Assembly (NCBI RefSeq): GCF_963853765.1
Contig: NC_088859.1
Location: 12,276,001-12,340,000, forward strand
Length of the DNA stretch: 64,000 bases
Direction of reading: 5' to 3'
DNA from: Magallana gigas
Lineage: Eukaryota
Under the pieces are notes generated by a model. The model did no database searches, was not told where the DNA came from, and saw only the letters and a list, made by a program, of their open reading frames with translations. Position numbers and translations under genes: made by a program. Of the stretch, positions 29-12,808 are shown piece by piece; within the stretch, counting starts at the first letter, position 1; the number at the start of each line of letters is the position of its first letter.

Positions 29-3000
29 CACTTGGTGAATGAGGAGCTTGGTCTGTGCAGTTCCTTCCCCTGAGTCCTGGTCCATCCCCTTATGATCCTT
101 CAGTATAGAAGAGTGGTCACTATTCAAGGCCTTGAATTGTGTCTGAAGGTTAGCAGTTATGTTTTGCAAAGCACTCAAGTAAACCTGAAAGAACCAACAT
201 ATACAATATTAATCTTACATTCAGGAAATATTCCGAAATAAGGTACAGTCGCACCTGCTGTTACGGCCACCTTTAATCAGCGGCCACTCGCCATGAGCGG
301 CCAGTTTTAATCCCGCCCGTTTAGTTTTACACTATATTTTAACTGATTTAAGCGGCCACCTGTCTAACGTGGCCAGCGGCCACTGTTTTTAGGTCCCGTG
401 GCTTCAACATGCCTGTTTTCAACGGCCATTTTGTCTGTTTTGTCACATGACTTTTGAATCTGACATGTGACCCCGTATCGAAAGAAGCCAAACTTCGAAA
501 GCTGATAATGAGTTAATGACAAATAAATGAGTGTGTTATTTGAAGTCTGCTGAGATTTAATGTGATAATTGATTATCATAACACCTGTTTTGTGTTGTTT
601 ATATATCGACACGTACTTATATACTTCATTACAAAGTCATTGTATATGGCCAGTCTTGCGCTGAACAGCTTAACATGTGCAAAATAGCCGGTAGTATGCA
701 CTTTTTTCCTAGAAAATTTCTTTGAGATAATAAAATGGGTTCTTAATATATATAAGAATGGAATTTTGATACTTTTTTTAAAAGGGAAAACATCGGCTAT
801 CGTAGTTCAGTAAGTAGCCTTTGTACGGAAACACTACTTCTGTTTGTTTACCGCATTTAATCCCTTGAAAATTATCATTTGGGCGTATTTAGCAGAAAAT
901 GTTTTGTTCTTAATCCCTTGATAGATAAATGGAACTAAAACGGCCATTTAGAATTAATATAAACTGTTTATTTAGCATTCCGAGCTGTGCATTCACCATC
1001 TCTGTGTACGCCGCCATTACAGATGCTATTAATAAATCTGTGCAATAGTACTCGATGTTTTTTTTCCATTAGTTTGAAACCTGGAATAAGAGGCCACCTG
1101 TCTTTAGCGGCCAGTTTGGCATTGTCCCACAGGTGGTCGCTTAAAACAGGTGCGACTGTACCTTTTTTATGTTTATGGGGAAAGAATAGGGGCTGGCTAG
1201 GTAATCCAATTACACAAGGTCCTAGGCACTCTCTCTCCCTTTCTTCTTTTTATCTCACTCACCTCATGACTTGACAGTTTTGATTGAATTTTTGGCAGCT
1301 CAGACCACAGAGAGTTGTTGACCAGCTGTATCATGTTGCTCAGATTCTCCAGTTTCTAAAATTGAAAAAAAAATATCACTGTAGTATTAATTGAACTACA
1401 TGTATTTTTAAACACATACTTGCAACCTTCTTGATTATCTGTGACATTTAACCAGACATTTAAGTGAGATTTAAACTACAGTAAAACATGGTTACATCTA
1501 ATATAATTATAACAAATTCAGGCTTACAGGGAAGTCAGAATGATTCCCCTTATCTGGAAATATATTATGCATTTATTGGATATAGTGAATAATTCTTAGA
1601 ACAAATCTGTATCTTTCATCCCTCATGCTTCACTATAACCATGTATTCCTGTACAACTTCTTGTTCATGATACTGGTCTTTTTGTTATGGAAAAAATGAA
1701 ATTTCCTTACTTCTGTGTCAAGGTCAACATGGCCTGACTCTCGACCCCCTGATTCACGACCACCACTCCCCATCTGTATGTTAAAAAACAACTTGTTTTA
1801 ATAAAATCTTAACAACATTGAAGAAATAATTGAAGATCACAGTCGGTATTTATCACATGTACCATATATGTCAGTACCATAATGTAATGTTTTAATACAG
1901 AGAAAAAAGTGTTACTGTGAATTTGTAACTTGACTATAACAGAAAATATTTTTAGTGATTTAATGAAGCAGAACAAACCTCCGGAGTCTGTTGTTTTTTC
2001 AGGTCTGCCAATTCTTTCTCAACTTTCTCTTTAAGTTTTTCCACCTCCAACTTCATTGCTTTCACATCAACTCCTAAATCCCCTATAGTCTGCAGGAATA
2101 GAAAGATGAATGCTAGCAACATCAGCTCATCTCATGATGAATTACCAATGCAATTAAAACTTAATATTGTGTAGTTGTGATTTGAAACCATTTTTTTTCT
2201 GATGCTCAGATGTAATGAACTTGTCACTAATGAATAGGCATTCAATATTAAGACTAGAGTAATAAATGTAGCAATTTCAGCACTTACCTTTAATAAGGTT
2301 GATTTTGGGACTTGAAATTTTCATGTATTGGCTTCATTACTTACCAGTGAGATAACTTGGACAAGAGAATTAATTTTGTGCAGATTTCATTACTTATCTC
2401 TGAGAGAATTTGGAATTGAGTAGGTAATGTCACTTACATTTGAGATAATGGGCACCTGCTTTGATAGTGTATTGACTTGATTCACAATGACTTGACTGCC
2501 TGGTTGACTTTTGCTGACTGCCTCTAAGGCGGAGCTTTGATCATTTACCTAAATAATTTCAGATCATTATTGGTAGTTACATGTACATCACATTCATTAA
2601 TTATTAACATCAAATATATGATAAACATATTGTTTTATCCGTACTAATGATATCTTAAGGACTTTAACAGATTGCATGTTTAGTCAAATTCGACGATTAA
2701 CTGAGATAAGATACAAAGATATGAGTGGGCATCACTGAGATTTCACATCCAGTGTCACATATTTTCACTATCCAAAAGCCGATTCATTCAACTTTTCTTG
2801 TTCCTAAGAACAATTCCTGTCCTTATTCTTTTTGACTTTTCAAAATTCCATGAAGGAAATATGGCGAATAGCATGAGGGCTGTTGTACATAATCATAAAC
2901 AAGGGTATACTGTCATTAGATGAGCTTCTTTTTCATCTTCTCAAAAAATAAAAGGCTTTCCCATGATGTAGTTTAGGCAGGATTTCATTAAATAATGAAA

Positions 3001-4998
3001 TTTTTACAATGGGGGTAACACCACATACACTTTATATGTTAACATATTTTAACAATGAATCTATAAACTTGAGCTGGTACCTGTAAATAAACTATGGAAA
3101 TTATGACCTTTGCAATCACAGAAAACAAACAAGGATATTTACTTTAGAAGTGAGGCTGGACAAACGTAGTTTAACATCGGCCATTTCCTTGGGGCTCTGT
3201 GTGACATTGACTAGATCTTTTTTGATACTGCTCTGAATTTGTTGCTTCAGTTCATCTACACTGGTCTGTAAACTGCTGCCTTTTACTGTCAATTAAAATT
3301 TAAAAAAAAATACAGTCATTAAAATCAAATTAAGATTGTCAGACTTTATTGCACATCTGTTCATGTATGTATAACATTTAATATGAAGAACTTAGCATCA
3401 GGTTTGTGGTTTGTGAAATTTAAGTCGTTTAACAAGATAAAACTTTATGCAAGAGCAAATAGTTTAGACAAACACTGGGTAATTTATTGTTTGTACATGC
3501 ATGTTTAATTTAGTTTTAAAATACTGTTCCAGTAATCAATCTTCTAGAAATAAAGCACCATTGTTAGCTAAGGTTACTAAAATATTGATTTACAGCAAAA
3601 TCATTGAAATTTCTTCTTACTGCAAACGGAGTATCAGTAGCTAATTATTTGCATTAATGTTACACATTATTTATTCATATACAGTAAAACACGCTTATAA
3701 TGAAGTGCCAGGACAGGCAATTTTGCTTTGTTATAAGCTTATTCATTATATACATCAAGTTTACAATATGTAATAAAGTCACAGGGAATGAAAATCACTT
3801 CCCTGCAAGCGACAATTCATTATAAGCGTGTTCGCTGTTACCATGTTTTACTGCATTAATCAATAAATCGTAGCATTTTCAATGCTGTTGATGTGTACCA
3901 ACCCATATTAACTAAAACCAAAGAAGCTAAAAAGTCATCTCAAGAAAAAACAGAGGAACAATCCTAAAATTTTTAAATTTACAAAATTTATATTAATATG
4001 ATACCTAACAGTAATGAATGAATTAAATTATTAACGTTTTTGTTAGCAGTATATTATCTTGAAATATCACTAGAACATGCAAATAAAATTTGACAGGTTA
4101 AAACCAGCCTACTACCTCAAAAATACCAGTCAAATAAAATTTCCTTCATATAATAATATGTCAATCCAATATTACTTGTCAATAGCAGAACATTCAGAGA
4201 TACACTCTATACATTTTTTTCCATAGAAACTTGAACCCTGCATGCTTTATAGTTGATGATGATTTTGTTTGCAACAGCTTGTAAAAGTAGACTCAATCAA
4301 TTTGTCATAAATAGTAATGAACAAGAAAGGCAAAAGAATAAAACAAAGACACATTCATCAGAACTCAATAAAAGAGAATCGACCAGTGGAAACAAAACAC
4401 AGAACTATTCAAGATACAACAAATAAGTCACCTTTATTAACTTCTTCCCGGATTTTTTCAACATTTTCTTTCAGTTGTAAATGCATGTATAACAAGGCGC
4501 CAATACAAATGAAACAAGTGACAACCATGAAAAATCCAAATACTGACATGCATGTGGAACAGCACGAGACTCGCCCCCTAGTGTTGGATAAGATAAAAAA
4601 AAATTGTTAACTGTTGATTTTTTCCAAATCAGATCATTTGTTATATAAAATTGAAAATCATTTTAAATTTGTTCAAAGATGGCAATCAAAATAATCCGAA
4701 AGCCCACGTAATTTAGTAAAACTAAAAGCCGAGACATGTTAATGTACGGAAATGAATTACACATTTGCCGCTAAATAAACCTCTCATTTAAAACTCACTG
4801 TCTCATGAAAGATTTACGATCAGTTATTAAAAATTCATCCACTTCGGACGACTCGGACTCCGTACGAAGAAGTTCGTGACCATTTTTCATCTTTCTCCGA
4901 GTTTTCCCACTTCCCACTAGTGCGTCAAGTTCTCGACGCTTTTTCATTTTCTTTGGCGGTTTAAAACCGACGTCTAAATTTCCCTGAGAGTCCAACAT
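29..4998 (-). CDS. EFCAB14: EFCAB14-like type II membrane coiled-coil protein, 5' part (continues beyond left edge). Exons 4998-4799, 4577-4432, 3285-3143, 2548-2438, 2089-1979, 1773-1711, 1355-1263, 184-29
   Basis: Exon 1 reads MKKRRELDALVG...HELLRTESESSEVDEF, recalling the vertebrate EFCAB14 N-terminus (MKKRKELNALIG...HRLLRTE). Exon 2 encodes a Cys-flanked TM helix (VSCCSTCMSVFGFFMVVTCFICIGALLYMHLQLKE) and later exons are coiled-coil-like. All introns are GT-AG with consistent phases (2,1,0,0,0,0,0) and an open frame. EF-hand not in window; name assigned from memory. Confidence 0.8.
246..1158. mobile_element. Non-autonomous TIR element (Tc1/mariner/pogo-type), intronic
   Basis: TA|CAGTCGCACCTG at 244-257 and CAGGTGCGACTG|TA at 1147-1160: perfect 12-bp TIR with TA on both sides; repeated subterminal GCGGCCA motifs; no transposase ORF. 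Confidence 0.9.
3682..3853. mobile_element. Short MITE with CAGTAAAACA termini; partial relative at ~1479-1540
   Basis: TA|CAGTAAAACACG ... CATGTTTTACTG|CA inverted termini; the same left terminus TACAGTAAAACATGG occurs at 1477. Confidence 0.7.
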
Positions 4999-5059
4999 GG
5001 GACATTGATAGATCTGATAATGTAAGTTTAAGGTCTAATCGATTTTGTAGTTTTTGACG

Positions 5060-5110
5060 TTCGATACGTACACCCGGAAGTGGTAAAACAAAAGTAGCTT
5101 TTACAAGAAA
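5060..5110 (-). promoter_or_regulatory. Promoter-like site of the proximal EFCAB14 first exon (ETS motif)
   Basis: CCGGAAGTG at 5074-5082, about 80 bp upstream of the ATG at 4998. Confidence 0.45.
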
Positions 5111-5807
5111 TACTTCGTATAAAAGAGCTTAGGAGGTGTCCGGTCCATTCGTACCAAATGAAATAAAAGAGTAGGACATTTCGCCCTCCCTTGTAGTCTT
5201 AACTCGTCATTCATCCTTAACCTGCAAATTACTTGCCAAAACCTTTGATTTTAATTCTAAACGAAAAACGCAATGAAATTCTCCCATGCCATGGATACAC
5301 ATACACTGCCAAAATGTATTTGATGTGACATAATTTCTTTCGAAATAAAATACATACATGTAAACCCTTATAAAACTTCTCTCACAATCTTGGTATGTAA
5401 CGAAGTATCAATAAAGTGAAGTGTAAGCCACTGATCTGCAAGGCATGGGTTTTAAATGCTGATTACATTTTGAACATAATAAACTTCAATATTCACATCA
5501 ATATACCAAGTACATAATTTTTATATGAATTTGAGTGCAAATGTTTATAATAATTTGAATCACGTACTTTTCACCAACAAGCAATAAAAACAGTTGTTTT
5601 TCTTGTGTATAAAGTTACTGGGTGTTGATGAATCATGGTTTTGATCTTGAATGTGTCTGAAAGTGTTAATTTTAATTAAATCTGGAAACATTAATACATG
5701 TATATCCATATTAATCATGTAATATACATATGTATAGACTTTGAGGTATGTGCAAGTGGCACCAGTAGAGATCAAATGCCACACATCAATATCCTTTGGC
5801 TCTCTTG

Positions 5808-6092
5808 TTAGTCCCATACCTGTTTTCACCGGAGGGGACTATAGCTTTCCTCTGCGTCCGTCAGTCTGTCTGTCTGTCCCACTTCAGTTTTCCACACTTT
5901 TTTTCTTTATGCGTTTGAGGAATAATATGAAATTTGCTGAACAGCTTCAAAATGTCAAACAACAGATCAAGTTTACACTTTTGTAGCGTCTGGTTGACAT
6001 ATTTTCGAGAGAAATTCTGCATAACAGAGCATTGTTTTCACAAACCAGTAGGGGACGTGTATTGCTTATGCAATACTCTCAGAATGCTTGTT
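5808..6092 (+). mobile_element. Helentron-associated non-autonomous element (HINE/DINE-1-like)
   Basis: 5' TTAGTCCCATACC followed closely by its inverted copy GGAGGGGACTA, then a (GTCY)n microsatellite; 3' CAGTAGGGGAC followed by a perfect hairpin GTATTGC-TTAT-GCAATAC (6059-6076). This is the canonical HINE layout. Confidence 0.8.
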
Positions 6093-6654
6093 GATATTGT
6101 CTTAGAGATGATGTGGAAAAGAGAGGACATTGATATATAAAAACGGCCATGTGTTGAAGTTGAACAACATTGACCAACGGCCAACTAATCACCAAGTACC
6201 CTACCGCCCCCCCCCCCCCCCCACCTCCTTTCATGAATGCCTCTCTCTCTCTAACACAGAGGATACAGTGCCACTGGAACTTGAAATGTTTGCATTCTAT
6301 TTATCATAAAGTTTTCTTTCTTCCAAAATATTTCTAGGTAAAATTGTATGGATACCCCGCATGCAAAGCTCTATGATCCATGAATATCAAACGTGAGGAA
6401 TTCAGCATTAAGGGGCATGAGATTGATTAGGAAAAACTTGATTTGGTCATTTTGAAGTCTTATCTTCCAGTATATGCAAAACTGAATATAATGCACTATT
6501 GATGAATTGGAACTGTCATATCTGTGTATAAATTCAAACTCTGTCACTTCTGTATTACTTATCAGTGAACAAGATAACTCAAAGCATAAATTTTGCTTAA
6601 AGCAGGTCAAATTTTGCAAGTCTGCTTCATTGTCATGATGGGTTGTGGACATAC

Positions 6655-8430
6655 CTTCATTGAGCTGCTGTTGTAGATCCTTCACTTGATTGGACAGCCA
6701 CACAGTAATGAAGCCCATAACCGTCACAGAGCACACCAACAGTAAAATAATCAGCATCTTCATGAACTGCCAGCAGTTACAGATCCCTCCATGGGACGAA
6801 GAGGGAGAACTATAGGGATTCCGCTTTCTGTAAAATAACATACCATGTTATTAATTAAACCAGAATAATACCAATGATCTTTTAAGGAGGCTGAATGGTT
6901 AATAAATGAACCATCGGATCTCCCTAAAACTTTAAAATATAGGGGTTCTTGGTTTTTTTTAGCTAAAAACTATTATTGAGAAAAGAAAACTCCATATATT
7001 TTGCTTTTTAAATTTTCAAATGGTATTTTTCTATATTTTTACATAGAGTTCTTCTTCAAAAGGAGATCGATACAGTCTAAAAATGGCCATACAGCCATCA
7101 AGCCCTTTTAAGCTATGGACTCGGCAGTTTATCTATTTTCCATAGCATATATGATTAACATTTACATTTCAGATGTTTGCAAAAATAGTACAGAAAAACA
7201 AGCAATAGGCGATAAAATACTACTATTTACAGTGGAAATAAAAACATTTCTTTGAGATTTCTTAGTTTGAAATGCTTTTTTAATTTTATACATCGTAGAA
7301 ACATTCCAGTTTGAAGGTGTAATTTTTTATCCATTTTCATCTTTTTGAGATTGGTTCATGAGATGTAATGTAATTTACGGATTCTCTTGCAAGTATTACT
7401 GGCATTATGAACAATTTTGGCCAAGGACCATTTCTCGCCAGTGCACTGTTACGACATTTTATCAACATCATATAAAAAAATAATGTAACAATGCACTGTC
7501 GAAAAATGGTACTTGACGAGGATTGGTCGCATGCCAGCATGGAATGATTAATAAGGACTGTGTTTGTTTGATATACTGTTAAAGTGAGGGGTTCCCCTAA
7601 AAATCCACGACAACTGCACAGGACATAACAAGCTCCCATGGTTCCACAGTACCATGCATGCTATTTTTTTGTTGTTGAAAACTTAAGTTTTAGAATTTCT
7701 GAATGATATACAATTCTCATTTTAATAAGGGCTCCATCAAGTATTCAATTTCAAATTTGCTGATAAATGCTTATTAAAAGAGTCAGGCAGGAAACTGAGT
7801 AAGTGGGTCTACTTGAGGAACTGGACCCCAAATTTTTCATTTCTTTTAAATGCCTCTCAGAAAAAAAAATAAAATATCATATGTAAGTTATCGAACTCAG
7901 CAGTAAATGCAAGTTCTAATATACCTGTAAATACATCACAAAAATCATAGCTGCATGCATGTTTTTCTACCATATGCAGTCTGTCGTGTATACTAGGTCT
8001 TAATAAAATTTAACACCTGCTGACCAACATAGGGCATATCAATCTATGAAAACTACAAGTCTGGAAATCAGAAGTGAATTAACACTTGGGGCGATGGAAG
8101 AAACAATTAGATAATATAGAAACATGACGTAAAATCGGTAAACAGTGGTAAACATGCTCTGTCAAAGATATTTGCTACTAGAAAGTGAAAGACATCTCTC
8201 TTTTTTTTTTTTTACTGTAATAGTGATTTTCTGAAGTTTTGAGCATTGCTACAAGTGTATAATGCTTCTATTCCAACTTCACACACGAGACAATGCCAGC
8301 AGTCATACCTGCGAACTTGCTTCTTTCCTTTCAGGGGAGGCAGCTGAAGCTCGTCTGTTTCCGACGAATCGTCTAACAGTGTCATCATGAGTTCCTCCCT
8401 CTGAATGTGGCCGTTACTACCCTTCTTCAT
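6655..8430 (-). CDS. Upstream two-exon module (8430-8309, 6827-6655): cytoplasmic tail + TM helix + coiled-coil start; probable alternative N-terminus of the EFCAB14-like gene
   Basis: ATG AAG AAG...CGC AG|gtatga (phase 2), ttacag|A AAG CGG, TM MLIILLLVCSVTVMGFITVWL, ends GAA G|gtatgt (phase 1), matching the phase-1 acceptor at 3285. Confidence 0.7.
6882..7112. mobile_element. Possible degenerate TTAA-flanked MITE
   Basis: TTAAGGAGGCTGAATG at the left loosely mirrors CATCAAGCCCTTTTAA at the right; internal ATCGGATCTCC / GGAGATCGAT inverted pair. Confidence 0.35.
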
Positions 8431-10351
8431 TGTTGCTTCTCATTACAACCCTCCCAAAAAACAAATCTGAACTTTGACAACTCCAGAACTCTTTCTTGTT
8501 TTTCTCAAACAGGAAGTTGTTGTAGGATTTAGGATAATTAGGTTGTACCAAATAATTTCGTTCGTCCAAATACTGTCCCAAATCAAGCTTCCCCAACTAG
8601 TAACAAATAACAAATTTAACTTCCTGGTAACTATCAGTTTAAAGAGTTGAATCACAACATTAAAATCCATTGCCTTCATAACTCCTATCAGCTGATAACA
8701 AACCATGTGACCATACCAATGTCAAGATAAATTTAGAGTAGCATAAGTGCACTGATTACAGAAATTCTTACCACAATGTCCATATAGGTTGGCCTTTCAT
8801 ACCTTTACATTTCAATACACGTATAACTTTCTGAAATAAGAGATTAATACTTTGCATTTATCTTCCACAGAGCTAAACTATCAAAAAATGTTGAAGACAT
8901 CTGTAAGTAACTTTTTTATTTCAACAATAAAGAAAAAAAAATACAAACATAACAAATATTGAGATGTAGAGATAGTTCAAAAATATTTACGCAATATTGC
9001 AATACAAACTTTTTTCCAGTATGCCAAAACTTTGCTGGGATTCATTTACATGTGTAACACATCATGAAACAAAATGGTCACAAATGGCATTAAGCTTGTC
9101 AAACTTAAATACCCGGTACTACCTTTCTCGAGTGAACAAAGACTAGTAACAGTCATCTACAGAAACATTGTAGTATGCAATTCAACCTAAGCAATTTTCT
9201 GTCACATTTCTCTCTGTTGTTTTTTATCACTTGGTTTACAGCATAAATATCTTCATACATGCCATTTATGAAAATGAATTTATGACCATCAGTATAAGTT
9301 CCCCAAATATGCCTTTTAAAAATATACAAAATTTTTACTATTTTTGTTTTTGAAATTTTAGAATGGGATATAAAAATATAATACTCAAGTCATCACACTG
9401 ATCAAGGTCAATCTTAGCATGAAACTTTCATCTTCCTTACTAACATATACTCCCAAAATAAATATGTTTATATCCATTATACAGTAATACTTAGCCAGAC
9501 ATGACTGAAAAACCAAACAATTTTTTAACATTATCTCAAGACCAGTTGAACTTTTGCATTTGCAAATAAATCTAAAATGAGTTTGAATGTGACATAACAA
9601 CAATTGAAAAATTATTTGAATTATGAAACAATTTAAGTGTTTCCGAAAACTCACAGATAAAAGTAGGAATATAGAATTTCATAAACACCCTTCTTCTAAA
9701 TTTGGAATAATATCAAAATGTGCATACTTCTATCAAAACTGCACTCTACTTAAAATCCAAAACATGTCCAAGAATACATACACGTAGTAATTGAAATATC
9801 TAAATTAACAAATCTCCTGTTAGTCTTATATTTAAAATGAACCTTACAACCTATAAAATTAATGAGAAATAGCAGGAAAAAAGTAGAAAGAAGGAAAAAT
9901 CTTGGACATACTATTATATAAACCCTGCCTTAGCCACTTGACTGGACTTATACACAGTTTCTACAACATGATTTGGTCAACTGTTTATAAACATTTTGAT
10001 CCAAGTCTTACATAAAACATTAATGATAAATCATCATCTGAAACTTTAACATGGTGACAAAACTCACAGACTTAGAAACATGTCATATGCTACAGAGCAT
10101 AAAATGAACGCTGTACACTGAAAGACAAAGCAAAAAAACATGGCCATTAAATGGCTTTGGCAAGTACTAACACGTACAATACTTATATAACATACATACA
10201 TCGTACCTGTACTCAATCTAATTAATAAAAAATTTTCCATGAATTATCTATTAACCTGTATTTATTGGGAGGAGAAGGTAAACATGTTGTGTATGACTTA
10301 TGAAAAATTACGGTATACAAAAACAAGAACAGTTGAGTTTATATAGACAAA

Positions 10352-12808
10352 CTAGACATCTACAGATAGTTCTTGATTGCTTTGAATGATAGCATCTAAT
10401 AAGTACTCTAAATTGTCAGAATTCCTGAAAAAATGGTGTTCAAAATGAACCCCCGGTAAAAGTCGGTGAAGAAGAGAGTGGACCTTCTTCATGAACATCT
10501 TTAGACACTTCTTCGGCTTTTTGCACAAAACAACGGAAGGTTCAAACACTTCGACGACCTTAACTGTGGAGGATTCAGTGTTAGCTACACCCTCTTCATT
10601 GTCAGCATCACGTGGAGTCTCTACTACACAAGTTAAACCTTGAACTGCCATTTCATTCTTACTTTCAGTTGGAAAAGTTTCACTAGTCTTTTCAACTGCT
10701 AGTAGCTCCATGAGAGGGTCAGATCTAGAGGCTGAAGTACTTTTCGAATCACCATTGGCGAGAACACTTGCTAATTTGTCCAAAACATGGACATCATTTT
10801 CACAATTGTCAACTAAAACATCAGAGGTTGTAGGAACTTTGTCGTTGCTTTTGTCATCATCACTTTTGTTGTCTATGTCATGATCCTCCATTGGGACTTC
10901 AGAGGGAGCAGTACTGACTGTGGGGGGTTGTGCATCTTCTATATCCATAGGAACCATTTCCTGAACACTGGTACATATCACTTTCTCCTGGAAAGAGTTC
11001 ACAAGATTTTGTGTTTATTGATTAACACTAAAACTTACTTTAATTCTAATGTAGCAATAATAAATATTATATGTCAATAATTTTGTTTAATGACTAATAA
11101 CTTATATATTAAATTTTACCTGGCTTGCATCCTTCATGACTTCATCCTCTATAACCATGTGAGTTCCATCTGGAAGTGCTTCAGATGAGATCATTTCTCT
11201 GGGCTTGTTTGTTGGCAAGAATCCTTGGTAATCTGAGTCCACATTGGTTTGCTGATCATTTGCAAAGTCAACATTGACAGATATTGTTTCACAGGTTGCT
11301 TCACATGTAAACGACTGATCCTGCACAATTCCTGAATCTGATAGACTTTGAAATCTTGATGTTGGAGGTGGGGAGGATATATTGGACGAAATATTGGAAA
11401 CATAAGCAGTACAATTTTCTAGCACTGGCATTTCATCATCTAAACACTCACTCTCATCCTGATATTTATGCAGAGAGTGAATATCTGTGTCCTCAGATTC
11501 AAGGTCCTTCTCTCTGTTGCTTGAGCGAATGACACGCATAACAAATTCTATGAATTCATCCACACTCTCAGTTTCTGCTTTCACTGTATGTTTCAGGTTA
11601 GCTGGTAGTAAACATTGTAATAGTAGAACAATTTTATTTCTCAGTGACACAAGGCGCATCATGTCTTGAATGAAATGTTTTTGTTCTTTCAGCAACTTTT
11701 TCTCATGCTGACGGGACTGTTTCTCTTTTTTGCTATGACTTTCTGCATCAATACAACATGCACAACTGTTATTCTTCACATTACGAGACCTGCGTCTCCT
11801 AGAGATTTTAGCTGGTACTTTATCAACATGACACACAAAGTCTGGATCGTTGGATGGGCAAGCTTCTTCTTCTTCTTCCTGAGGTGTTGACAAGAAAGAC
11901 ATGAACTGTTGCTGCCATGCAATTGGAGTTAAAACTGATTTTCTTCTGGATGAAGTTCTAGTATTCAAACTTGAATTGGTGACATTGACTTCTGATGAAT
12001 CTGTAGTTGATGGTTTGGGTACAACCTGAGAGTCACAATGTTGGTTTATCACACAACTTTTAGGTTTATCAACTTTATTTTGGACAGAATTTTGATGACC
12101 TCCAGTTTTAACAAGAGAATCAGGTTGCAGTTCATAAGAAGAATATATCACGGCTTCTTTATCAGACACCTTTTGCAAAAGAGGTGTGTCAGGCACTTCT
12201 GGCAGTTGAGATTCAAGACAATCTTTATTAACCCCACATAAGCACCCATTGTTTTGGGAATTGTTATTTTGTTCACAACATGACTGAGTATCTGTACAAG
12301 ATGCACTTGTTGGCTTTGCTGAACCTTGTTCTTGACTAGTTAAACCTTCTGGTGATCCACAGCTATTGCTGCTGTTAAAAGGTGAATTGCCATTGTCCCG
12401 AATTCCAGAAAACTCTTGAGAAATGCCCGTTATTGGAAAATCTGTGCAGAAAGTCTCACTGTTCATCAAAGAAGAATTGAAGTTTCTTGGTTCCTTCCGT
12501 AAATTAGTGCAATTTGAGGTATCTGCCCTTGAATGAAATTCAGACCACGGGGTCTGCTGATTTCCCATCCATACATCATTGCTTGAAAAAATACCATGTT
12601 TCAGTTTTTTCCTTTTCTGCCAATCAAACTTCTTTTTACTTGCACCACTGGCCCACCATTGTTTTCTATACTTCTTGCGCAATCTTTTGTACACATTCTG
12701 TGAATCTCTTTTCTCTTTCATTGCACCATTGGTTGTTAATGGTTTGTTGGAATTACTTTCACCAATACTCTGCAGATGTATTATGAATTCTCTTTCAAAG
12801 CCTGCCAT
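10352..12808 (-). CDS. Uncharacterised 774-aa protein, two coding exons (12808-11120, 10987-10352)
   Basis: The 568-aa and 216-aa ORFs join in phase 0 through CAG|gtaaaa ... ctctttccag|GAG (131-bp intron). Basic N-terminal segment (NLS-like), long S/N/D/E-rich low-complexity parts and two related helical motifs. Confidence 0.75.

What the first reader, a model, noticed from the sequence alone, without database searches (positions are those of the whole stretch)
3143..8430. Two interchangeable cytoplasmic-tail + TM modules feeding one EFCAB14-like ectodomain
Seen: two separate two-exon modules (8430-8309 + 6827-6655, and 4998-4799 + 4577-4432) each encode a basic/acidic tail, a Cys motif, one TM helix and the start of a coiled coil. 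Both have intron phases 2 then 1, and both donors fit the single phase-1 acceptor at 3285. No private downstream exons for the upstream module were found between 6655 and 5000. Each module has an ETS-like motif upstream (~8510, 5074). Inference: duplicated alternative promoters put different cytosolic tails and TM anchors on the same luminal/extracellular domain.
Basis: partly seen in the sequence, partly recalled or inferred. Interest (0 to 1): 0.7.

Follow-up and report, generated by a model that had tools for sequence, protein, structure and literature searches.

The report
Two alternative membrane-anchor modules, one oyster gene
One oyster gene for a single-pass membrane protein with a calcium-binding (EF-hand) end has two alternative pairs of 5' exons; RNA reads show both pairs joined to the same third exon, so two proteins differ only in inner tail and membrane anchor, which is a well-documented but ordinary case of alternative first exons.

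Summary

- **Both modules are spliced to the shared exon.** RNA reads join 6655 to 3285 (9 and 19 stranded poly(A) reads, plus contigs of two other studies). Contigs also join 4432 to 3285. No private exons for the upstream module were seen.
- **A separate RNA contig** runs A1-A2-C-D-E.
- **Usage differs by sample.** Module A dominates the two poly(A) runs. Module B is about twice as deep as A in the two contig runs.
- **Both products are 620 aa.** They differ only in the first 98 residues, and each has one hydrophobic helix.
- **Both modules are conserved.** In a related oyster (dS about 0.15), dN/dS is 0.08 for A, 0 for B and 0.10 for the shared exons. Splice sites and the ETS-like promoter motifs are kept.

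A duplication origin is plausible but unproven: 23% identity, no DNA similarity. I could not confirm the EFCAB14 label by a database hit. Different sorting of the two isoforms is inferred only. This is a new member of a known kind, of moderate-to-low interest.

The parts
8309..8430 (-). Module A, exon A1 coding part: ATG at 8430, 40 codons plus 2 nt, giving a basic/acidic Ser-rich tail. The exon's 5' UTR reaches upstream to roughly 8540 or further.
   Evidence: Sequence and translation. An in-frame TGA at 8442-8440 rules out an N-terminal extension. Joint 8309/6827 was seen in 2 and 22 raw reads and in two contig runs. In a related oyster 119/122 nt are identical and all 3 changes are synonymous.
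6655..6827 (-). Module A, exon A2: end of the tail, the CNC motif, the TM helix (residues 65-86) and the start of the coiled coil. It ends in phase 1.
   Evidence: Joint 6655/3285 was seen in 9 reads (5 start places) and 19 reads (17 start places), and in contigs of depth 138.5 and 101.3. It is single copy in the genome. In the related oyster 164/173 nt are identical, with no indels and dN/dS 0.13.
4799..4998 (-). Module B, exon B1: the first ATG is at 4998 and has a weak context. The ATG at 4947 has a strong context and opens with MKKRR. The exon encodes a basic/acidic tail.
   Evidence: Joint 4799/4577 was seen in contigs of depth 278 and 297. The 67-aa reading frame is identical in a related oyster, where all 7 nt changes are synonymous. 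It is single copy.
4432..4577 (-). Module B, exon B2: the CC..C motif, a Phe/Cys-rich TM helix and the start of the coiled coil. It ends in phase 1.
   Evidence: Joint 4432/3285 was seen in contigs of depth 343 and 179.9. In the related oyster 143/146 nt are identical and all changes are synonymous.
3143..3285 (-). Shared exon C, with a phase-1 acceptor. It is the first exon common to both isoforms.
   Evidence: It is the acceptor for both 6655 and 4432. Translation.
29..2548 (-). Shared exons D (2548-2438), E (2089-1979), F (1355-1263) and G (184-29), all coiled-coil ectodomain. Exons H-L lie left of the window (G000:C7, window coordinates -183 to -2733). They encode a K319L-like PKD domain and the EF-hand C-terminus.
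   Evidence: The gene model gives an open 620-aa frame for either module. A loose end at 3137 matches exon D. Contig L008 joins C-D-E. Pfam hits.
8510..8517 (+). ETS-like CAGGAAGT site about 80 nt upstream of the module A ATG. It sits inside a 27-nt block that is perfectly conserved in the related oyster. A second copy lies at 8619-8626 on the minus strand.
   Evidence: In run X22 raw-read depth falls from 13.5 (8348-8538) to 1.28 (8539-8700).
5074..5081 (+). ETS-like CCGGAAGT site about 75 nt upstream of the first module B ATG, conserved in the related oyster.
8417..8443 (-). An 8-codon upstream open reading frame that overlaps the module A start codon out of frame. It is kept in the related oyster.
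   Evidence: Sequence; alignment. No test of function.

Best explanation
One minus-strand gene encodes a type II (N-terminus inside) single-pass membrane protein. The protein has a long glycosylatable coiled-coil stalk, one K319L-like PKD domain and a C-terminal EF-hand. It is transcribed from two alternative starts.

Each start supplies its own two coding exons: tail, then juxtamembrane cysteines, TM signal-anchor and the first heptads. Each second exon splices in phase 1 to the same exon at 3285. The outcome is two 620-aa proteins that are identical from residue 99 onward and differ in cytosolic tail and membrane anchor.

**Shown:** the exons, both sets of junctions, the RNA strand, sample-dependent usage, and purifying selection on both modules.

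**Inferred:**
- Separate promoters marked by conserved ETS-like sites.
- Origin of module A by an old tandem duplication of module B, with loss of the first ~19 residues.
- A consequence for sorting. Module B started at ATG 4947 has Arg-Arg at positions 4-5, the position described for N-terminal di-arginine ER retrieval signals of type II proteins (PMC2799409). Module A has no Arg in its first ten residues and has a Leu/Ile/Val-rich anchor in place of a Phe/Cys-rich one. The two isoforms may therefore sit in different compartments, as ECE-1 isoforms do.
For: - **Sequence:** phases, GT-AG sites and open frames.
- **Module A junctions:** 3285/6655 in 9 reads (5 start places) in X21 and 19 reads (17 start places) in X22, with anchors up to 73 nt. 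Contigs in X9 and X6 show the same joint. 6827/8309 was seen in 2 and 22 reads and in contigs with a 173-nt side.
- **Module B junctions:** 3285/4432 and 4577/4799 in contigs of X9 and X6, at depth 180-343.
- **Strand:** all exonic raw reads have the first mate on +, which fits a minus-strand RNA in the usual stranded library.
- **Independent contig:** a Logan RNA contig from a further run joins A1-A2-C-D-E.
- **Usage:** exon A2 depth is 6.3 and 31.9, against 0.5 or less for exon B2, in X21/X22. In X9/X6 the B junction is 2.5 and 1.8 times as deep as the A junction.
- **Topology:** one hydrophobic helix per isoform, none elsewhere, and 8 N-glycosylation sequons downstream.
- **Within-species haplotype contigs:** 1 synonymous difference in 814 module-A sites, against 1.5-7% in the flanks.
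- **Related oyster (intron identity about 80-83%):** module A has 3 amino-acid changes and dN/dS 0.083. Module B has none. Shared exons give 0.10. Splice sites, the upstream ORF and the ETS-like motifs are conserved.
- **Copy number:** both modules are single copy.
- **Domains:** EF-hand and PKD hits.
Against: - **Weaker support for module B.** Its junctions rest on contigs with only 27-29 nt on the short side. Fewer than 3 raw reads showed them in the two poly(A) runs.
- **No 5'-end data.** Module-A contigs in X9/X6 run colinear past 8700 for 118 and 325 further letters. They could therefore overlap the 3' UTR of the upstream gene, so a separate promoter is not proven.
- **No protein-level evidence.**
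- **The sorting idea is unsure.** The di-arginine reading holds only if translation starts at 4947 rather than 4998. No localisation data exist.
- **Module homology is weak** (BLASTP found nothing at default settings).
- **Limited taxonomic reach.** Conservation is shown in only one further taxon, of unknown name. A1 and A2 come from contigs of two different runs.
Confidence: 0.88

Rival explanations
1. Module A is transcriptional or splicing noise, or a decaying duplicate. Its RNA exists, but it makes no functional protein.
For: No similarity to any family. No relatives were found in the searches that could be run. An upstream ORF overlaps its start codon. One individual carries a repeat inserted 73 nt upstream of the ATG.
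Against: The frame is intact and the length is kept in a taxon at dS about 0.15, with dN/dS 0.08. That is as constrained as the shared exons. Almost no polymorphism falls in the exons, although the flanks differ by 1.5-7%. It is the dominant form in two poly(A) libraries.
Confidence: 0.04
2. Module A has no promoter of its own. It is reached by read-through or extension from the upstream gene (open frames at 10352-12808), so the 'isoform' is a conjoined transcript.
For: Contigs in X9 and X6 continue colinear from 8309 past 8700 for 118 and 325 further letters. A poly(A)-signal-like AATAAA of the upstream gene lies near 8920.
Against: Raw poly(A) depth falls about ten-fold upstream of 8539. No splice joint enters exon A1 within the stretch laid. 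An in-frame stop at 8442-8440 means nothing upstream could be fused to the protein. A conserved ETS-like block sits at 8530-8505. A contig that spans two genes does not show one transcript.
Confidence: 0.06
3. The two modules did not arise by duplication. Module A was recruited from unrelated sequence or by exon shuffling, and resembles B only because any type II anchor needs a tail, a TM helix and a link to the coil.
For: No BLASTP hit between the second exons. No DNA similarity. Against shuffles that keep tail, TM and coil composition, the alignment score is only z 2.3, with 62 of 2000 shuffles as good.
Against: - The intron phases are the same (2 then 1).
- The coding length is the same, 295 nt from the conserved ATG.
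- The phase-2 intron falls at aligned residues (R41 of A against Q of MRQ in B).
- There is a local match: MK-NGH, then an acidic SSE-x-DE run. The start of A aligns to Met-20 of B.
- No other copy of A2 exists in the genome that could have been a donor.
Confidence: 0.35

Closest known systems
Endothelin-converting enzyme-1 (ECE-1) isoforms a-d
   Same: ECE-1 is a type II membrane protein. Alternative promoters of one gene give isoforms that differ at the N-terminal cytoplasmic end, share the whole luminal/extracellular part, and differ in subcellular location and tissue distribution (PMC2567069).
   Different: [quoted passage not shown] Here the whole tail, the juxtamembrane cysteines, the TM anchor and the first heptads are exchanged, and each module is two exons. 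Different localisation is not shown here.
Vertebrate EFCAB14 (EF-hand calcium-binding domain-containing protein 14)
   Same: The architecture is the same: an N-terminal basic tail opening with a Met-Lys-Lys-Arg motif, an acidic Ser/Glu run, a cysteine pair before one TM helix, a long coiled coil and a C-terminal EF-hand. Module B carries the features I recall for the vertebrate N-terminus. That recollection is my own knowledge and was not checked here.
   Different: No named EFCAB14 sequence could be retrieved, so homology is untested. The oyster protein has a K319L-like PKD domain that I do not recall in the human protein. No second N-terminal module is known to me in vertebrates. The papers that mention EFCAB14 are association and marker studies with no functional work.
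MHC class II invariant chain p33/p35 and other type II proteins with N-terminal di-arginine signals
   Same: These are isoforms of a type II protein that differ in whether an Arg-Arg lies within the first five residues. That position governs ER retrieval (PMC2799409). Module B started at 4947 has RR at positions 4-5. Module A has none.
   Different: In the invariant chain the difference comes from alternative start codons in one exon, not from alternative exons. Here the motif is only read off the sequence.
Mutually exclusive tandem-duplicated exons
   Same: The modules are adjacent, have equal phases and are never joined to each other.
   Different: Classical cases are internal exons with clear sequence similarity that share one promoter. 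Here the modules are 5'-terminal, each has its own ATG, and similarity is marginal.

Membership tests
Alternative first exons / alternative promoters | Two mutually exclusive 5' exon sets, each with its own start codon, spliced to one common downstream acceptor | tested here: met
   Joints 6655/3285 and 4432/3285 were both seen. No A-to-B joint was listed. Contig L008 joins A1-A2-C-D-E.
Alternative first exons / alternative promoters | Separate transcription start sites | tested here: inconclusive
   Depth drops upstream of 8539 in raw reads, but contigs run past 8700. Conserved ETS-like motifs lie upstream of both modules. No 5'-end data.
Alternative first exons / alternative promoters | Usage differs between samples | tested here: met
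   Module A is far above B in X21/X22. The B junction is about 2 times as deep as the A junction in X9/X6. Tissues are unknown because the runs are coded.
EFCAB14 | C-terminal EF-hand calcium-binding motif | tested here: met
   The last exon hits EF-hand_6 (26.4 bits, cut-off 25) and EF-hand_1 (25.4 bits, cut-off 25.4).
EFCAB14 | Single N-terminal signal-anchor helix with no signal peptide | tested here: met
   One hydrophobic segment per isoform, none elsewhere.
EFCAB14 | Significant sequence similarity to a protein named EFCAB14 | not testable with these tools
   No continuous stop-free reference reaches the 355 aa needed to pull 620-aa relatives. The representative search with exon J was swamped by multi-PKD proteins. 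The other searches returned only same-locus fragments.
Tandem exon duplication | Detectable homology between the two modules | tested here: inconclusive
   22.7% identity. z is 6.3 against full shuffles and 2.3 against segment shuffles. Relaxed BLASTP gave E 0.006, and there is no DNA match. Phases are equal and the coding length is 295 nt in both.
N-terminal di-arginine ER retrieval signal (type II proteins) | RR at positions 2-3, 3-4 or 4-5 from the N-terminus | tested here: met
   Module B from ATG 4947 begins M-K-K-R-R. Module A begins M-K-K-G-S. The rule is quoted from PMC2799409. It is met on sequence only, and it fails if translation starts at 4998.
N-terminal di-arginine ER retrieval signal (type II proteins) | Motif-dependent ER localisation | not testable with these tools
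   This needs cell-biological assays.

The most novel reading that the evidence does not exclude
The swap of the whole tail-plus-anchor module may be a regulated switch that moves one uncharacterised, widely conserved calcium-binding ectodomain between compartments. Under this reading B is held in the ER by its N-terminal Arg-Arg, and A is free to reach the Golgi or cell surface and perhaps be shed. That would give a first functional handle on the EFCAB14 family. It would also be a rare natural case in which the signal-anchor itself, not only the tail, is exchanged by promoter choice.
Probability: 0.25. Interest if true: 0.5.

Novelty: new member of a known kind. Interest (0 to 1): 0.3.

Why it matters
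The mechanism, alternative first exons giving N-terminal isoforms of a type II membrane protein, is textbook. Automatic annotation of this genome may well list both isoforms already.

What gives it some value:
- The exchanged unit includes the membrane anchor itself.
- Both versions are kept under purifying selection.
- Usage swings from about 2:1 in favour of B to at least 7:1 in favour of A between samples.

For a protein family with no known function, a natural pair of isoforms that differ only on the cytosolic and membrane side is a ready-made experiment on where the protein has to be. For genome annotation, the result fixes both start codons and the shared acceptor.

Tried and rejected
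- **Representative search.** I queried exon J (108 aa). Its half PKD domain pulled in multi-repeat proteins that filled the 150 rows, so no full-length relative was obtained.
- **Homologue searches.** The length window (0.55-1.75 times the query) excluded 620-aa proteins. Only same-locus genomic reading frames and one RNA-contig fragment came back. A blank for other species therefore means nothing.
- **Metagenome contigs.** Two scans for the C-D and A2-C junction sequences found no match.
- **Protein atlas.** A search with exon B1 gave no usable hit.
- **Pfam on the module exons.** Nothing found.
- **BLASTP of A2 against B2, and blastn of the two module regions.** No significant similarity.
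- **Earlier findings of this scan.** Nothing bearing on the gene.
- **Considered and rejected:**
  - Module A as part of the upstream gene's coding sequence: an in-frame stop lies at 8442-8440.
  - A paralogous locus as the source of the 80%-identical contigs: both modules are single copy in this genome.
Full report
**What is in the sequence.** The window is G000:C7:12276001-12340000 of a 564-Mb genome. Run labels such as 'oyster metagenome' among the holders point to an oyster.

- A1 is 8430-8309 (122 nt) and A2 is 6827-6655 (173 nt).
- B1 is 4998-4799 (200 nt) and B2 is 4577-4432 (146 nt).
- The shared exon C is 3285-3143.

All introns are GT-AG. In both modules the phases are 2 then 1, and C accepts phase 1. 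An in-frame TGA at 8442-8440 closes the frame just upstream of the A1 ATG.

B1 has two in-frame ATGs. The one at 4998 has a weak context and the one at 4947 a strong one. From 4947 the B coding length is 295 nt, the same as A.

**The whole gene.** I fetched the DNA left of the window and built the rest of the gene from open frames and splice sites. Exons D-G lie in the window and H-L lie beyond it. Either module gives an open 620-aa product.

Pfam finds the two halves of a K319L-like PKD domain in exons J and K, each below threshold on its own. It finds an EF-hand at threshold in the last exon. Each isoform has a single hydrophobic helix and none elsewhere, and 8 N-glycosylation sequons follow it. 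The protein is therefore read as type II, with the tail in the cytosol.

**RNA evidence.** I laid two raw stranded poly(A) runs (X21, X22) and the contigs of two RNA runs from other studies (X9, X6) on 3000-8700.

| Joint | X21 reads | X22 reads | X9 contig depth | X6 contig depth |
|---|---|---|---|---|
| 6655/3285 (A2 to C) | 9 | 19 | 138.5 | 101.3 |
| 8309/6827 (A1 to A2) | 2 | 22 | 138.5 | 101.3 |
| 4432/3285 (B2 to C) | none listed | none listed | 343 | 179.9 |
| 4799/4577 (B1 to B2) | none listed | none listed | 278 | 297 |

- The A2-to-C reads begin at 5 and 17 distinct places and have anchors up to 73 nt.
- Joints are listed only from 3 reads, so 'none listed' means fewer than 3.
- The contig anchors next to exon C are 27 nt plus 2 ambiguous letters. 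That is what a k=31 assembly graph gives where two paths merge, so it fits both isoforms being present in one library. This last point is my inference.
- Exonic raw reads all have the first mate on +, as expected for a minus-strand RNA in the usual stranded library.
- No canonical joint leads from A2 into 6655-5000 or to B2. The joints at 5855-6062 are non-canonical, lie on both strands and sit in a high-copy repeat.

**Independent confirmation.** A protein search restricted to A2 returned P0151. It is a 139-aa fragment called on a 1,024-nt Logan contig of yet another run. That contig aligns to A1, A2, C, D and E in order.

**Regulation.**
- In X21 and X22 the A2 bin has depth 6.3 and 31.9, against 0.5 or less for the bins holding B2. 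In X9 and X6 the B junction is 2.5 and 1.8 times as deep as the A junction. Usage is clearly sample-dependent, but the tissues are hidden by the coded run names.
- The 8-mer CMGGAAGT lies about 80 nt upstream of the A ATG (8510-8517, with another copy at 8619-8626) and about 75 nt upstream of the first B ATG (5074-5081). The window has 7 such sites against 2.05 expected.
- Raw depth falls about ten-fold upstream of 8539.
- The X9/X6 contigs continue past 8700, so overlap with the 3' UTR of the upstream gene cannot be excluded. The start sites remain inferred.

**Is module A a real coding unit?**
- *Within the species.* Four haplotype contigs show 1 difference in 814 module-A sites, and it is synonymous (6743). 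Their flanks differ at 1.5-7% of columns.
- *Across taxa.* An exact look-up of the B1 reading frame returned roughly 5-6.5-kb genomic contigs that are only 80-83% identical to the window. They cover 6975 to -631. A further contig, found through the A1 reading frame, covers 10470-7577 at 81.5%.
- *These are orthologues.* Both modules are single copy in this genome, so these contigs come from a related taxon, not from a paralogue.
- *Selection.* All exons align without indels at 93-98% identity, against roughly 73-93% (mostly about 80%) in the 60-nt flanks. By the Nei-Gojobori method, module A has dS 0.158 and dN/dS 0.083, with three amino-acid changes (S48P, M63I, C73S). Module B has dS 0.158 and no amino-acid change. 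Shared exons C-H have dN/dS 0.10.
- *Other conserved features.* The A1 donor, the A2 acceptor and donor, the short upstream ORF over the A ATG, and all three ETS-like sites are conserved.

Module A is therefore as constrained as the ectodomain it serves.

**Origin of the modules.** The two 98-residue modules are 22.7% identical. The global alignment scores z 6.3 against full shuffles. Against shuffles that keep tail, TM and coil composition it scores only 2.3. Default BLASTP of the second exons finds nothing, and the DNA shows no similarity.

In favour of duplication:
- The phases are equal.
- The coding length is equal.
- The phase-2 intron falls at aligned residues.
- The start of A (MKKGSNGH, then an acidic SSE-T-DE run) matches B from its Met-20 (MKNGH, then SSE-V-DE).

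I put an old duplication at about 0.55-0.6 and independent recruitment at about 0.35.

**How it most likely works.** What is shown: promoter or first-exon choice puts one of two tail-plus-anchor modules on an identical ectodomain.

What is inferred: the modules direct the protein differently.
- B from ATG 4947 begins M-K-K-R-R, with Arg-Arg at positions 4-5. That is the position described for di-arginine ER retrieval signals of type II proteins (PMC2799409).
- A begins M-K-K-G-S and has no Arg in its first ten residues.
- The anchors also differ in make-up: Leu/Ile/Val-rich in A against Phe/Cys-rich in B.
- Both have juxtamembrane cysteines that could be palmitoylated.

The closest worked-out parallel is ECE-1. 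Its alternative promoters give isoforms that differ only in the cytoplasmic N-terminus and sit at the surface or inside the cell (PMC2567069). None of this was testable here.

**Comparison with what is known, and verdict.** The label EFCAB14 fits the architecture and my recollection of the vertebrate N-terminus. The papers that mention EFCAB14 are association or marker studies.

The mechanism is a known kind, alternative first exons. The less common feature is that the signal-anchor itself is exchanged and that both versions are conserved. Novelty is 'new member of a known kind' and interest is about 0.3.

Noticed in passing
window 8503 / L008:1-318: In one RNA contig (Logan, SRR11939890) the module-A 5' UTR is colinear with the genome only up to 8503. 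Upstream of that it carries 314 nt of a high-copy repeat (98-99% identical copies on many chromosomes). This is probably a polymorphic insertion between the ETS-like site and the A1 ATG, and it is transcribed into the 5' UTR.
   Followed up: partly
G000:C1:76020764-76070679: The same repeat forms a tandem array of at least 25 copies spaced 2,094 bp apart on contig C1. Shorter arrays lie on C4, C5 and C10.
   Followed up: no
window 5674-6246: A repeat in the intron between A2 and B1 has very high RNA depth on both strands (contig word depth up to 54,000), with many non-canonical joints and loose ends. Most of it (5809-6087) is absent from the related oyster's contig.
   Followed up: partly
window 3573-3954: A second intronic repeat is expressed on both strands and shows an opposite-strand joint at 3703/3736. 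Positions 3680-3856 are absent from the related oyster's contig, where a weak inverted match appears instead.
   Followed up: no
window 244-1160: A roughly 920-nt element in the intron between exons F and G has more than 40 copies at 87-97% identity across the genome. It is absent from the related oyster's contig. It is a young, active-looking transposon family.
   Followed up: no
window 8417-8443 (minus strand): An 8-codon upstream ORF overlaps the module-A start codon out of frame. It is kept in the related oyster with two amino-acid changes. It may act as a translational brake on isoform A.
   Followed up: partly
window 10352-12808 (minus strand): The upstream neighbouring gene has two large open frames (216 and 568 aa) with no Pfam match. 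They are conserved in haplotype contig L014, with 12 differences in 2,358 nt. Its 3' UTR may reach a poly(A) signal near 8920, close to module A.
   Followed up: no
window 4719-5482: Low but continuous sense-strand poly(A) read depth (1-4) runs upstream of and over B1 in X22, with almost none over B2. Several reads carry 4-5 differences. This may be unspliced RNA, a divergent allele, or a B-region transcript that is not spliced to B2.
   Followed up: no
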